NCBI GenBank assembly: GCA_977020255.1
Contig: CDROCS010002027.1
Location: 1-64,000 of the forward strand
DNA: 64,000 bases
Source of the DNA: Obrimoposthia wandeli
Taxonomy: Eukaryota
Direction of reading: 5' to 3'
A program made the translations under genes and the position numbers. The notes under the pieces are model-generated. The model did not search any database. It saw nothing but the letters and a program-made list of their open reading frames with translations, and was not told the DNA's origin. Shown here one piece after another: positions 3,333 through 35,967 of this stretch (its first letter is position 1; every line of letters starts with the position of its first letter).

Positions 3333-4532
3333 TTAGATATCCAGCAATATACGTGCTGGATCTTCTAACATATCTTTGATAGCCACCAAGAACTGCACCG
3401 CTTCTTTACCATCACACATGCGGTGATCGTAAGAAAGGGCCAAGTACATCATCGGTTGTATAACCACTTGTCCATTTACTGCCATTGGCCGCTCTTGGAT
3501 TTTGTGCATACCTAAGATAGCCGTTTGTGGCGGGTTCAAAATCGGGGTGGATAGTAGTGATCCGAAAACACCGCCATTGGTAATAGTAAACGTACCACCG
3601 GCCATATCATCCAAGCCCAATTTGCCATCACGACCGCGCAGTCCAAAGTCACGAATAGTTGACTCTATTGTCGCCAGCCCCATGCTATCAGTGTCTCTTA
3701 ATACCGGTACCATTAAGCCACGGTCCGTTGATACGGCTACACCGATATCTTGGTAACCATGGAAAACCATATCGTTACCGTCTATTGATGCATTGACTGC
3801 AGGATAGCGCTTTAACGCTTCTGTCGCCGCTTTTACAAAGAAAGACATAAAACCTAAACGCGTATCATGGGTTTTTTCAAACAGATCTTTGTATGTTTTA
3901 CGCATCTCCATAATAGGACCCATATTAACTTCGTTATACGTAGTTAACATGGCGGCTGTTTGTTGTGCTTCTACCAATCGCTTGGCGATAGTGGCGCGCA
4001 ATCTAGTCATTGGAACGCGTTTTTCAACACGTTCACCTGCCATAACAGCGGCTGGTGCAGCTGCTACAGCCGTTTTTGCGGCTGCTTTTACAACAGGTGC
4101 AGCAGCTGTCTTCATGAAGTTTTGTACATCTTCTTTGGTGACGCCACCGTTTTTACCCGTGCCTTTAATGTTGGCTGCATTTAAATTGTTTGCTTCAATC
4201 AATTTACGTGCTGCTGGACCTACTTTATCATCAGCATCCGCATCAGTATTTTCAGCTTCTGAGCTAGCAGCGGGTGCATTTTCAGCTCCTGCAGCGCCCG
4301 CTTCGAACATAGCGATTACTTGATCGGATAAAACGGTATCACCTTCACCGGCAATAATATTAACAATCACACCATCAGCAGGTGCTACCACTTCTAAAAC
4401 GACTTTGTCTGTTTCAATATCAACTATTAAATCATCAGCTGAACAAGCTTCACCTGGTTGTTTGTGCCAAGTCGCTACTGTGCCATCAGCTACAGATTCT
4501 GGAAAAGTAGGTGCTTTAATTTCGATGGACAT
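3333..4532 (-). CDS. sucB: 2-oxoglutarate dehydrogenase E2 (dihydrolipoamide succinyltransferase)
   Basis: Lipoyl domain IETDKV, Ala-rich linkers, catalytic SYDHR. Confidence 0.97.
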
Positions 4533-18374: not shown

Positions 18375-18450
18375 GGGGCCATAGCTCAGCTGGTAGAGCG
18401 CAACGCTGGCAGCGTTGAGGTCAGGAGTTCGACCCTCCTTGGCTCCACCA
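18375..18450 (+). tRNA. tRNA-Ala(GGC)
   Basis: 76 nt GGGGCCA...TGGCTCCACCA, D loop AGCTGGTA, anticodon arm CAACG-CTGGCAG-CGTTG, GTTCGA T loop, encoded CCA. Confidence 0.97.
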
Positions 18451-18468: not shown

Positions 18469-18544
18469 GGGGCCATAGCTCAGCTGGTAGAGCGCAACGC
18501 TGGCAGCGTTGAGGTCAGGAGTTCGACCCTCCTTGGCTCCACCA
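18469..18544 (+). tRNA. tRNA-Ala(GGC), identical second copy
   Basis: Same 76-nt sequence after an 18-nt spacer. Confidence 0.97.
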
Positions 18545-33466: not shown

Positions 33467-34258
33467 TTACTCTTGCTTGTGTAAATGCACATCCATTTGC
33501 GGGAAAGGAATACTAATACCTGCCTCATCAAACCTGAGTTTCACCTTCTCTGTGGTATCCCAAAGAACCCCCCAATAATCGGCGCTATTCACCCAAGGCC
33601 TAACAATGAAATTAACGCTACTATCGGCAAGTTCCGATACAGCAATCACTGTTTCGGGATCTTTCAAAACTCTGTCATCTTCAGCAATGATATCAGCGAG
33701 CAACTGTTTAGCTTGCCTTAAATCAGCTTCATAGCCTATACCAAACACCATATCTACCCTACGGGTATCTTTGGCTGAATAGTTTATTATTACGCCTCCG
33801 TAGATAGCTCCATTAGGTACAATGATTGCGCGGTTATCAACAGTACGCATCATACTGTTAAATATAGAAATCTTTTCAACAATCCCCGATACTCCAGCAG
33901 CTTCTACAAAATCACCTTCTTTAAAAGGCTTAAAGAGTAACAACATTACCCCAGCGGCAAAGTTCTTTAAAGAGTCTTGCAGTGATAAACCAATGGCTAA
34001 ACCTGCAGCACCCACTATTGCGATCAACGAAGTCGTATCCACCCCTAATCTATCTAAAGCGGCAACAATAACGACTAAAAACATAATAGCGTTACCGATA
34101 GATAATACAAAATCTACTAACATTTTATCCATTTTGGATTTATTTAGTATTTTTCTAAGCAGCCCTAAAATCATTTTTATCAGTATTTTACCAATAAAAA
34201 ATATCGCTATTGCTAAAGCAATATCAATAGCCCAAGGCATAATGTATTGATCAACCAT
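33467..34258 (-). CDS. mscS: Small-conductance mechanosensitive channel
   Basis: GAAGLAIGLSLQ, NFAAG, PFKEGD, IVPNG, INYS, RRVD, ISIPFPQMDVH. Confidence 0.93.
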   Translation of the reverse strand: MVDQYIMPWAIDIALAIAIFFIGKILIKMILGLLRKILNKSKMDKMLVDFVLSIGNAIMFLVVIVAALDRLGVDTTSLIAIVGAAGLAIGLSLQDSLKNFAAGVMLLLFKPFKEGDFVEAAGVSGIVEKISIFNSMMRTVDNRAIIVPNGAIYGGVIINYSAKDTRRVDMVFGIGYEADLRQAKQLLADIIAEDDRVLKDPETVIAVSELADSSVNFIVRPWVNSADYWGVLWDTTEKVKLRFDEAGISIPFPQMDVHLHKQE

Positions 34259-34496
34259 AATATTTTTATCTCCTTAAAGTGTTCACTCAGTGAATCAGCT
34301 TTTATTGTGTGTTAATGACCACTGCAATAGCAATTTGAATCATTTGTAGTCTACGCTTATCGCATCCAACTATTGCATACGTTAGTATAATCAGTTTAGG
34401 CTGAAACCAATAATTGTTTAACAGCCATTAAGCTAAAAAAGATTATAAAGCTTTTGCATTAGTTTGCAGGAACTGCAAAAAGTGATAGTTTAAGTT

Positions 34497-34870
34497 GCGG
34501 TTAAGGCTAATATTCTTAAAACTATTTGAACCATAAACCTTCGGACACAGACAGCACTTATCATTCCCATAAGTACATTCAATGCTTATCAATACGGCAA
34601 CCAGGGTTCTAATTTTTTGTATTTGCCAAAAATTAAAGTAACCACCTTTAAGGAAATAGCGAACAACTCCAAGACGCCACTGGCGTAAAGGATTGTTTGT
34701 GATTGAGGCAATGGTTACAGGCGGGCTGGTTGCCCGGCGAAAACCATTAACAAAGAGCACGAATAATCCTGTACGCCCCGTAGGGTGGATCTCTAAGCGG
34801 TCAACTCCTTTGTCAGAATATTTGTAAAGGACTGGCCATTCACTGCACGTTCTTCCGCGCATTTAGCCAT
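34497..34870 (+). ncRNA. Candidate structured non-coding RNA, family not recognised
   Basis: GC-rich island with nested helices incl. GGCGUA-A-AGGAUUGUUUGUG/CACGAAUAAUCCU-G-UACGCC; G-U pairs favour the + strand; candidate promoter TTGCAG-16-TAGTTT upstream. Confidence 0.5.
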
Positions 34871-34874
34871 TCAG

Positions 34875-34883
34875 TTATCCACA
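34875..34883 (+). promoter_or_regulatory. DnaA box, perfect consensus
   Basis: TTATCCACA. Confidence 0.65.
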
Positions 34884-35110
34884 GGGAACATCTGGGGACT
34901 TATTCGCTACTTGCTTAATCGAAAGATCCATTTAATAACGATTTTACTAGTCATATAAAACTCAATTTAGCCATATAACAGTTTAACAAAGCTATTCATT
35001 GGAAAATATCACTCTAAATATTTGATTTTTTGATATATTTGTTGTAATAGTATTACATAGGTATATCATTTATTCGTCTAAAGTTAACTTTAATTATATA
35101 GTAGCCTGTT

Positions 35111-35680
35111 ATGAAAAATTTCCTTATCATTATCCTATTATTCAGCTACATAGAATCAAGTTTTGCTATTTCTGCTCATGTTTCTGACGACTTGCAAGTT
35201 TATTATAGATCCGGACCTTCAACTAAATATCGCCTTGTTGGTACATTAGTCAGTGGTGATACGATTACCATTTTGGATGATACAACCAGCAAACGCTTTT
35301 ATAAAGTAAGCACATTGCAGGGTAAAGTTGGTTGGATAGCAAGCAATAAAGTTAAAACAGGAGATAGTGCTAAAACCAAGGCATTACAACTTGAAAAATC
35401 TTTATCGAGTAGTATCGCTTTGATCAAAAAACAAGCAAATGAAATTCATCGTTTAAAGAACTCGCTAAGCAAACAACAAATTGAAAATGATAATCACTCG
35501 AATAAACAATCCCAACTCAATTCGGAAATAAACTCTTTAAGCGATCAAATTAATGATTTAGACGATAGCAATTTAATTCGCTGGATGACCCATGCGGGTA
35601 TCGTAACTATTATCGGCATTTTTCTGATTTTTATCGTTTCTATTTTCAGAAAGCGCAAGAACTACAACGAAATTTATTAA
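35111..35680 (+). CDS. SH3-domain protein (YgiM/TIGR04211-like)
   Basis: Signal peptide, VSDDL.VY.RSGPS..YR..G.L.SG, GW, coiled coil, C-terminal TM + RKRK. Confidence 0.85.
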   Translation: MKNFLIIILLFSYIESSFAISAHVSDDLQVYYRSGPSTKYRLVGTLVSGDTITILDDTTSKRFYKVSTLQGKVGWIASNKVKTGDSAKTKALQLEKSLSSSIALIKKQANEIHRLKNSLSKQQIENDNHSNKQSQLNSEINSLSDQINDLDDSNLIRWMTHAGIVTIIGIFLIFIVSIFRKRKNYNEIY

Positions 35681-35933: not shown

Positions 35934-35967
35934 TGTCTACAAAGTTATCCACACTATCTGGGGATAA
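35934..35967. promoter_or_regulatory. DnaA-box cluster: perfect box plus inverted 1-mismatch box, and a degenerate third
   Basis: ctgtctaca-aag-TTATCCACA(35945-53)-ctatc-TGGGGATAA(35959-67). Confidence 0.65.

What the first reader, a model, noticed from the sequence alone, without database searches (positions are those of the whole stretch)
34497..34870. Candidate ~370-nt highly structured ncRNA of no family I recognise, ending at a DnaA box
Seen: 34681-34860 is 50% GC (90/180 by my count) versus 20% at 34981-35040. Hand-folded + strand helices: 34505-10/34863-68 (GGCUAA/UUAGCC, closing the ends); 34556-61/34569-74; 34610-17/34628-35; 34642-48/34782-88; a long arm 34682-34701/34758-34777 (19 bp plus one A.G) continuing into 34710-16/34742-48 and 34722-26/34732-36; and 34799-34812/34825-37. 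Five G-U pairs would be A-C mismatches on the other strand. A candidate promoter TTGCAG-16-TAGTTT (34464-91) precedes it and TTATCCACA follows at 34875. It lacks the hallmarks of tmRNA, RNase P, 6S, SRP, CsrB, group I/II introns, common riboswitches and small ribozymes, and no RT or transposase is adjacent. Inference: a novel trans-acting RNA, or a long regulatory leader whose transcription could be tied to DnaA.
Basis: partly seen in the sequence, partly recalled or inferred. Interest (0 to 1): 0.72.

Follow-up and report, generated by a model that had tools for sequence, protein, structure and literature searches.

The report
IS5-type miniature transposon, not RNA gene
The GC-rich, strongly folding stretch between mscS and the SH3-domain gene is a 263-bp non-autonomous transposable element (a MITE with IS5-type ends), one of a repeat family found at dozens of unrelated sites in marine bacteria, so it is an ordinary kind of feature, although its internal hairpin is unusually well conserved.

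Summary
The conserved unit is window 34652-34914 (263 bp), not 34497-34870. It has 19-nt terminal inverted repeats and a TTAA duplication on each side. It recurs at 45 distinct two-ended sites in metagenome contigs, at up to 90% identity. There, 17 sites have perfect 4-bp duplications and most flanks read YTAR. The closest sampled relative genome lacks it. Its ends match the ends of 1195-bp IS5 copies that encode an IS5-family transposase; its interior does not match them. No frame is coding, and the 139-aa minus-strand ORF is spurious. No Rfam family matches. All excess folding lies inside the element (z -4.4 and -5.1 on the two strands). TTATCCACA is part of the element and is exact in 20 of 45 copies. 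One point remains interesting: the long internal hairpin (about 34678-34785) keeps its pairs through compensatory changes, 16 of 34 pairs against 4.5 in shuffles, and its G-U pairs favour the + strand. Verdict: a new member of a known kind (IS5-type MITE). Any RNA-level role for its core is unproven.

The parts
34648..34651 (.). left copy of the 4-bp target duplication (TTAA)
   Evidence: Flanks printed. Same 4 bp at 34915-34918. In the family, 17 of 45 sites have perfect 4-bp duplications and 31 of 45 left flanks read YTAR.
34652..34914 (+). the MITE itself, 263 bp (orientation by convention = window + strand)
   Evidence: Profile match 1-261 of 263, E 9.7e-89. 88-90% identical copies in unrelated contexts. 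No frame open across copies and no codon-position signal.
34652..34670 (+). left terminal inverted repeat (19 nt)
   Evidence: Matches the ends of 1195-bp IS5 copies retrieved, compared.
34896..34914 (-). right terminal inverted repeat (19 nt)
34915..34918 (.). right copy of the 4-bp target duplication (TTAA)
34678..34785 (+). long irregular internal hairpin with conserved loops and covarying stems
   Evidence: Covariance model hit 34676-34790: 137 bits on + against 39 bits on -. 34 pairs, 96.5% paired, 16 pairs with changes on both sides against 4.5 +/- 1.3 in shuffles and 2-10 in slid controls. 10 pairs changed on both sides yet kept between the window copy and the Amphritea copy.
34875..34883 (+). 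TTATCCACA (DnaA-box-like 9-mer), inside the element, 31-39 nt from its right end
   Evidence: Exact in 20 of 45 family copies.
34443..34862 (-). 139-aa ORF, judged spurious; it runs across the left boundary of the element
   Evidence: No Pfam or NCBIfam hit. Database 'relatives' share only the 36-48 residues that overlie the element, and some carry Pfam domains of unrelated families. No third-position excess. Its first ~70 codons lie in DNA that is absent from L001.

Best explanation
[quoted passage not shown] It is a 263-bp non-autonomous derivative or hitch-hiker of an IS5-group insertion sequence. Shown: it has 19-nt terminal inverted repeats of the IS5 type. It sits in a duplicated TTAA, and the family's sites read YTAR. 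It encodes no protein. It belongs to a family of 180-591-bp copies scattered through intergenic regions. It is missing from the closest sampled relative. Inferred: it was inserted by an IS5-group DDE transposase supplied in trans, which recognises the ends and makes a 4-bp staggered cut at the target. Inferred: at this locus it is a passenger between the divergent mscS and SH3-domain genes, lying 393 and 196 nt from their start codons and upstream of the only promoter-like site predicted for the SH3-domain gene. The internal hairpin is a family-level feature kept by compensatory change. I infer that it serves the element, for example through folding of read-through transcripts or binding of a factor, rather than acting as a host RNA gene at this site.
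For: Ends and duplication. Family: 97 matching stretches in metagenome contigs, giving 45 distinct two-ended sites. Of these, 17 have perfect 4-bp duplications and a further 13 match at 3 of 4. 31 left and 27 right flanks read YTAR. Copies have no orientation bias relative to neighbouring genes. Link to IS5: seven 1195-bp (1194-1196) elements with matching ends were found; six have identical CTAG or TTAG duplications and one differs at one base. Their ORF is NF033581 IS5 family transposase, E 4e-109. A partial IS5-group element in the same community (L212) ends in letters identical to the family's end at 16 of 19 positions, followed by TTAG. Published IS5 targets are CTAG, CTAA and TTAG (PMC5493358). 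Presence/absence: L001 has 97% MscS identity but lacks window 34579-35002. The Amphritea balenae copy is absent from three other Amphritea loci and from the Neptuniibacter loci that hold the same yidD neighbourhood. Copies are about 90% identical to the window's, while shared genes on the two copy-bearing contigs where this could be compared are about 67-69% identical. Non-coding. No Rfam family.
Against: No full-length parent with the same subterminal sequence was found; similarity to IS5 stops after about 20-27 nt. The comparison with L001 is not a clean empty site: about 70-90 nt on each side of the element do not align. Only one copy lies in this 64-kb window, so copy number in this genome is unknown. 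The element is GC-rich, whereas MITEs are usually AT-rich (PMC10969869). The strength and strand bias of the hairpin covariation exceed what a purely selfish repeat requires.
Confidence: 0.92

Rival explanations
1. The element is a MITE, but its core is a functional strand-specific structured RNA (or single-stranded DNA) module under purifying selection. It might, for example, act on the partner transposase or on transcripts that contain it. This adds to the best explanation rather than replacing it.
For: 16 of 34 pairs covary, against 4.5 in shuffles. 10 double changes keep pairing between copies that are 68% identical. Fixed U-G pairs and conserved asymmetric loops persist. The model scores 137 bits on + and 39 on -. 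33 of 87 pairs covary over the whole element.
Against: No promoter-like or terminator-like site inside the element. No orientation bias relative to neighbouring genes. The minus strand folds more stably in 21 of 22 copies. The two main subfamilies account for much of the covariation, so independent events are few. Unpaired and paired columns are equally diverse. There are no expression data.
Confidence: 0.2
2. One reading: a single-locus, roughly 370-nt trans-acting ncRNA gene with its own promoter at 34464-34491, ending at a DnaA box.
For: Excess folding of 34497-34870 on the + strand, z -3.05. No Rfam hit. Covariation in the inner helices.
Against: The left 155 nt do not fold better than shuffles and are ordinary intergenic sequence shared with L001 up to 34578. 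The conserved unit has different ends, which are inverted repeats with a target duplication. It is repeated at 45 or more sites. The promoter is not detected.
Confidence: 0.03
3. A cis-regulatory leader or DnaA-controlled operator for mscS-yidD or the SH3-domain gene.
For: TTATCCACA at 34875. Copies or remnants lie in the same mscS-upstream region in L074, L007 and L006. The Amphritea copy also lies upstream of yidD.
Against: The closest sampled relative, L001, has the same genes without the element. L006 and L007 carry it in the opposite orientation. Other Amphritea and Neptuniibacter loci lack it. The 9-mer is a family feature at unrelated loci.
Confidence: 0.03
4. A protein-coding gene: the 139-aa minus-strand ORF 34443-34862.
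For: An open ATG-started ORF of 139 codons. Five database proteins match it.
Against: No family hit. The matches cover only 24-35% of it and start inside the element; three of the five carry Pfam domains of unrelated families, acetyltransferase or YCII. No frame is open across copies, and diversity is 0.10, 0.14 and 0.13 at codon positions 1-3.
Confidence: 0.01

Closest known systems
IS5 (1195-bp insertion sequence, IS5 family, IS5 group)
   Same: The ends match at 15-18 of 19 positions, including the C/T difference between left and right ends at position 13. Both make a 4-bp target duplication at CTAA, TTAG, TTAA or CTAG-type sites (PMC5493358).
   Different: No transposase gene. 263 bp instead of 1195 bp. 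The interior is unrelated beyond about 20-27 nt.
Prokaryotic MITEs in general (Correia, ERIC, QMITE; review PMC10969869)
   Same: Small size, inverted-repeat ends, target duplications that fade with age, intergenic location, no coding capacity, and transcripts predicted to fold stably.
   Different: GC-rich relative to its surroundings rather than AT-rich. The fold is a branched structure with a local long hairpin, not simply the two ends pairing.
BrickBuilt MITE of Porphyromonas gingivalis (PMC4596501)
   Same: A MITE with IS5-family-type ends, no remnant of a transposase, and a tandem minisatellite inside. Some family members here (L219, L224, L289) carry six to nine tandem copies of a 27-28-nt unit.
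   Different: No sequence relation. The window's own copy has no array.
bcr1 repeats of the Bacillus cereus group (from my own knowledge, not checked with a tool or paper here)
   Same: A MITE-like interspersed repeat reported to keep an RNA fold through compensatory changes.
   Different: Different phylum, size and ends. This is a resemblance by recollection only.

Membership tests
MITE (non-autonomous IS derivative) | Short length (about 50-1000 bp) and no transposase gene | tested here: met
   263 bp; the family ranges 180-591 bp. No open frame shared by copies and no codon signal.
MITE (non-autonomous IS derivative) | Terminal inverted repeats | tested here: met
   19-nt ends in the window and in every two-ended copy.
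MITE (non-autonomous IS derivative) | Target site duplication | tested here: met
   TTAA on both sides in the window. 17 of 45 sites are perfect and 13 more match at 3 of 4.
MITE (non-autonomous IS derivative) | Many copies in unrelated genomic contexts | tested here: met
   45 distinct two-ended sites in metagenome contigs. Copy number in the window's own genome was not testable.
MITE (non-autonomous IS derivative) | Ends shared with an autonomous IS that could supply transposase | tested here: met
   IS5 copies with matching ends and an NF033581 transposase. A partial IS5-group element in the same community matches at 16 of 19 end positions. No full parent with the same interior was found.
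MITE (non-autonomous IS derivative) | Presence/absence polymorphism between relatives | tested here: met
   Absent in L001 and in other Amphritea and Neptuniibacter loci. The L001 site is not a clean empty site.
MITE (non-autonomous IS derivative) | Demonstrated movement | not testable with these tools
   Only sequence evidence is available. A direct test is outside what this report may propose.
Autonomous IS5-family insertion sequence | Encodes a DDE transposase (PF01609 / NF033581) | tested here: not met
   No transposase match anywhere in the window. The ORF on the element has no family hit.
Any Rfam RNA family | Covariance-model score at or above the family's gathering threshold | tested here: not met
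   Only two tRNAs in the window. Nothing below E = 1 in 34250-35120. Nothing in L019, L074 or L001.
Stand-alone bacterial sRNA gene | Own promoter and intrinsic terminator bounding the conserved unit | tested here: not met
   No promoter-like or terminator-like site inside 34652-34914. This was a simple consensus scan only, so weak or non-sigma-70 signals are not excluded.
DnaA-controlled regulatory site | A DnaA box conserved at the orthologous locus | tested here: not met
   The 9-mer belongs to the repeat, exact in 20 of 45 copies at unrelated loci, and the closest sampled relative lacks the whole stretch. DnaA binding itself is not testable here.

The most novel reading that the evidence does not exclude
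The core of this IS5-type MITE family is a previously undescribed, strand-specific structured RNA (or single-stranded DNA) module. It has been kept by selection across subfamilies that have diverged to 68% identity, and it spreads by riding in a transposon shell. It could act on the partner transposase or on host transcripts that contain it.
Probability: 0.18. Interest if true: 0.6.

Novelty: new member of a known kind. Interest (0 to 1): 0.3.

Why it matters
It removes a false lead. A GC-rich, strongly folding intergenic stretch with no Rfam hit looks like a new RNA gene, but it is a mobile repeat, and its ORF is the kind of spurious call that pollutes protein databases (five such 'proteins' were found). 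It also documents a MITE family with IS5-type ends in marine Oceanospirillales-type bacteria. The family is more alike between hosts than the few shared host genes that could be compared, which points to spread between lineages. The well-supported covarying hairpin inside it is a small, concrete case for asking whether bacterial MITEs carry selected RNA structures.

Tried and rejected
Rfam at gathering and at permissive thresholds gave no family.

blastn of the element against plasmids and E. coli genomes gave no match; the ends are too short for those databases.

A degenerate core pattern in viral contigs gave three hits that proved to be chance.

I considered an IS1182-family element as the parent (L288). 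I rejected it because that element has its own inverted ends and a 7-bp duplication inside a MITE copy, so it is a nested insertion.

A clean empty site in L001 was not obtained, because the flanks are too diverged.

Gene-orientation bias of the copies: none found.

Coding potential in any frame: none found.

A possible remnant of a second copy around the other TTATCCACA at 35945 shows only 11 + 9 collinear nt, which is not significant.

CsrB-like enrichment of GGA was judged by eye only; about 6 per 270 nt is close to expectation, so I did not pursue it.

Full report
Observation. GC is 0.50 at 34681-34860 and 0.20 at 34981-35040. All eight hand-folded helices are true complementarity, and TTATCCACA sits at 34875-34883. 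The claimed 374 nt fold better than shuffles on the + strand (z -3.05) and less so on the - strand (z -1.71). Rfam gives nothing there, at gathering or at E up to 10. The neighbours are mscS (33467-34258, -) with yidD behind it, and a TIGR04211 SH3-domain gene (35111-35680, +). Further out lie mqo on one side and recD and recB on the other.

What the unit really is. Loci anchored on MscS from 80 species place the window among Oceanospirillaceae/Nitrincolaceae bacteria related to the Osedax symbiont Rs2. The closest, L001 (97% MscS identity), aligns with the intergenic region at 34259-34578 and 35003-35106 but lacks 34579-35002. The GC-rich stretch instead matches Amphritea balenae next to yidD, a shortened copy in L074, and metagenome contigs in quite different gene contexts at 88-90% identity. 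The 'proteins' that resemble the 139-aa minus-strand ORF share only the 36-48 residues that overlie this stretch, and some carry Pfam domains of unrelated families. Alignment of the copies fixes the unit at 34652-34914, 263 bp. It has 19-nt inverted repeats at its two ends and TTAA immediately outside each end.

A repeat family with target duplications. One metagenome scan with a masked stretch of the window's own core found 97 stretches. From these and the earlier loci I extracted 45 distinct two-ended insertion sites, 180-591 bp long. Of these, 17 have a perfect 4-bp duplication and 13 more match at 3 of 4. 31 left flanks and 27 right flanks read YTAR. All sites appear intergenic, with no orientation bias towards neighbouring genes: left neighbours split 19 against 18, right neighbours 20 against 17. 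No reading frame is open across copies, and diversity at the three codon positions of the 139-aa ORF is 0.10, 0.14 and 0.13, so nothing is coding. On the two copy-bearing contigs that share genes with the window, those genes are about 67-69% identical at the DNA level, whereas the best copies are about 90% identical to the window's copy. The repeat is thus more alike than those host genes, as expected of something that moves between lineages.

Link to IS5. A pattern built from the real ends found seven 1195-bp (1194-1196) elements in viral contigs with matching inverted ends; six have identical CTAG or TTAG duplications and one differs at one base. Their 338-aa ORF is an IS5 family transposase (NF033581, E 4e-109; PF01609). 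Similarity between these elements and the window's element is limited to the ends, about 20-27 nt. Contig L212, from the same community as the repeat family, holds the last 134 codons of an IS5-group transposase (63% identical). That element ends in letters identical to the family's end at 16 of 19 positions, followed by TTAG. It is the best candidate for the transposase source, but no full parent was recovered. Published IS5 target tetranucleotides are CTAG, CTAA and TTAG, with a ttaa site also drawn in the bgl region (PMC5493358). These features meet the usual definition of a prokaryotic MITE (PMC10969869).

What was excluded. L288 carries a 1.7-kb insert between the two halves of a copy, and the insert encodes an IS1182-family transposase. 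The insert has its own inverted ends and a 7-bp duplication within the small hairpin of the copy, so it is a nested insertion and not the parent. Its transposase gene is in three pieces, meaning at least two breaks. The comparison with L001 shows absence but not a clean empty site. In the mscS-upstream region, L074 has a 180-bp copy in the window's orientation. L007 and L006 have weak remnants in the opposite orientation. This speaks for repeated insertion into an AT-rich spacer rather than one ancient conserved feature. The Amphritea balenae copy is missing from three other Amphritea loci and from the Neptuniibacter loci with the same yidD neighbourhood.

The structure. RNAalifold on 22 full copies predicts 87 pairs, 33 of them with at least one compensatory change: the ends pair, then a long hairpin, a small hairpin, a long-range 9-bp helix and a further hairpin follow. 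For the long hairpin, in 54 distinct sequences, 96.5% of cells are paired. 16 of 34 pairs show changes on both sides, against 4.5 +/- 1.3 in shuffles and 2-10 in slid controls. Between the window copy and the 68%-identical Amphritea copy, 10 pairs changed on both sides and stayed paired, and 3 broke. Fixed U-G pairs make the hairpin a better fit on the + strand: 137 against 39 bits. Against an RNA gene, several points stand. The terminal stem is better on the - strand. By my comparison of the ends printed, this is because of a C/T difference between left and right ends that IS5 itself also has. The - strand is the more stable fold in 21 of 22 copies. Much of the covariation separates just two subfamilies. 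Paired and unpaired columns are equally diverse. No promoter-like or terminator-like site lies inside the element. Template-switch correction of quasi-palindromes could in principle mimic selection, but the persistent wobble pairs and asymmetric loops argue against that (inference).

The DnaA box. TTATCCACA lies 31-39 nt from the right end and is exact in 20 of 45 copies. It is therefore a property of the repeat. From my own knowledge, the outside end of Tn5 contains a DnaA box that aids its transposition. That is a lead, not a test, and DnaA binding here is unknown. A second TTATCCACA at 35945 is followed by a 9-mer also found in the element's right end, but the match is not significant.

Mechanism and verdict. 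Shown: a non-coding 263-bp unit with IS5-type inverted ends and a 4-bp duplication, which is a member of a dispersed family and is absent from the nearest relative. Inferred: it was inserted by an IS5-group transposase acting in trans, is a passenger at this locus, and carries a hairpin that serves the element. I rate it a new member of a known kind, of modest interest. There is a roughly one-in-five chance that the core is a selected RNA module worth following up with transcript data.

Declaration of a slip. While reasoning, before I had tool evidence, I recalled from memory the terminal letters of IS5 as a lead. I used none of those letters in any call. Every comparison reported here rests on IS5 copies that the tools returned. 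Search patterns were real letters of the window or of retrieved copies with N at variable positions. Profiles (hmmbuild, cmbuild) were used only for searching.

Noticed in passing
L288:912-2621 (nested element) within a MITE copy at about L288:788-2805: An IS1182-family insertion sequence with its own inverted ends and a 7-bp duplication sits inside the small hairpin of a MITE copy. Its transposase gene is in three pieces, meaning at least two breaks.
   Followed up: yes
L219:14018-14608, L224:6632-7161, L289:5855-6370: Some family members carry six to nine tandem copies of a 27-28-nt unit in their middle, a minisatellite inside a MITE like the BrickBuilt element of P. gingivalis.
   Followed up: partly
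L081:2712-2855 and 3847-4109 (same arrangement in L233 and L227): A partial copy and a full copy in inverted orientation, about 1 kb apart, flank a 149-aa GNAT acetyltransferase gene. The layout resembles a composite transposon.
   Followed up: no
L212:1-531 and 1061-1380: One short contig holds the end of an IS5-group element. It also holds a MITE copy that abuts a fragment resembling the N-terminal part of an IS5-type transposase, so the repeat seems to have landed in or beside another IS.
   Followed up: partly
window 35945-35965: A second TTATCCACA, followed 3 nt later by ATCTGGGGA as in the right end of the element. It lies in the 912-bp spacer between the SH3-domain gene and recD. The match is not significant as a remnant, so it may be chance.
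   Followed up: partly
L006:3626-3693, L007:3516-3722, L074:3584-3763: The mscS-upstream spacer holds copies or weak remnants of the family in three other species, in both orientations, so the spacer looks like a repeated landing site.
   Followed up: partly
window 18375-18447 and 18469-18541: Two adjacent tRNA genes with identical Rfam scores, probably a tandem duplicate.
   Followed up: no
window 33822-34250 (+): A 142-aa ORF lies entirely inside mscS on the opposite strand. It is almost certainly spurious, and a similar ORF appears in L074.
   Followed up: no
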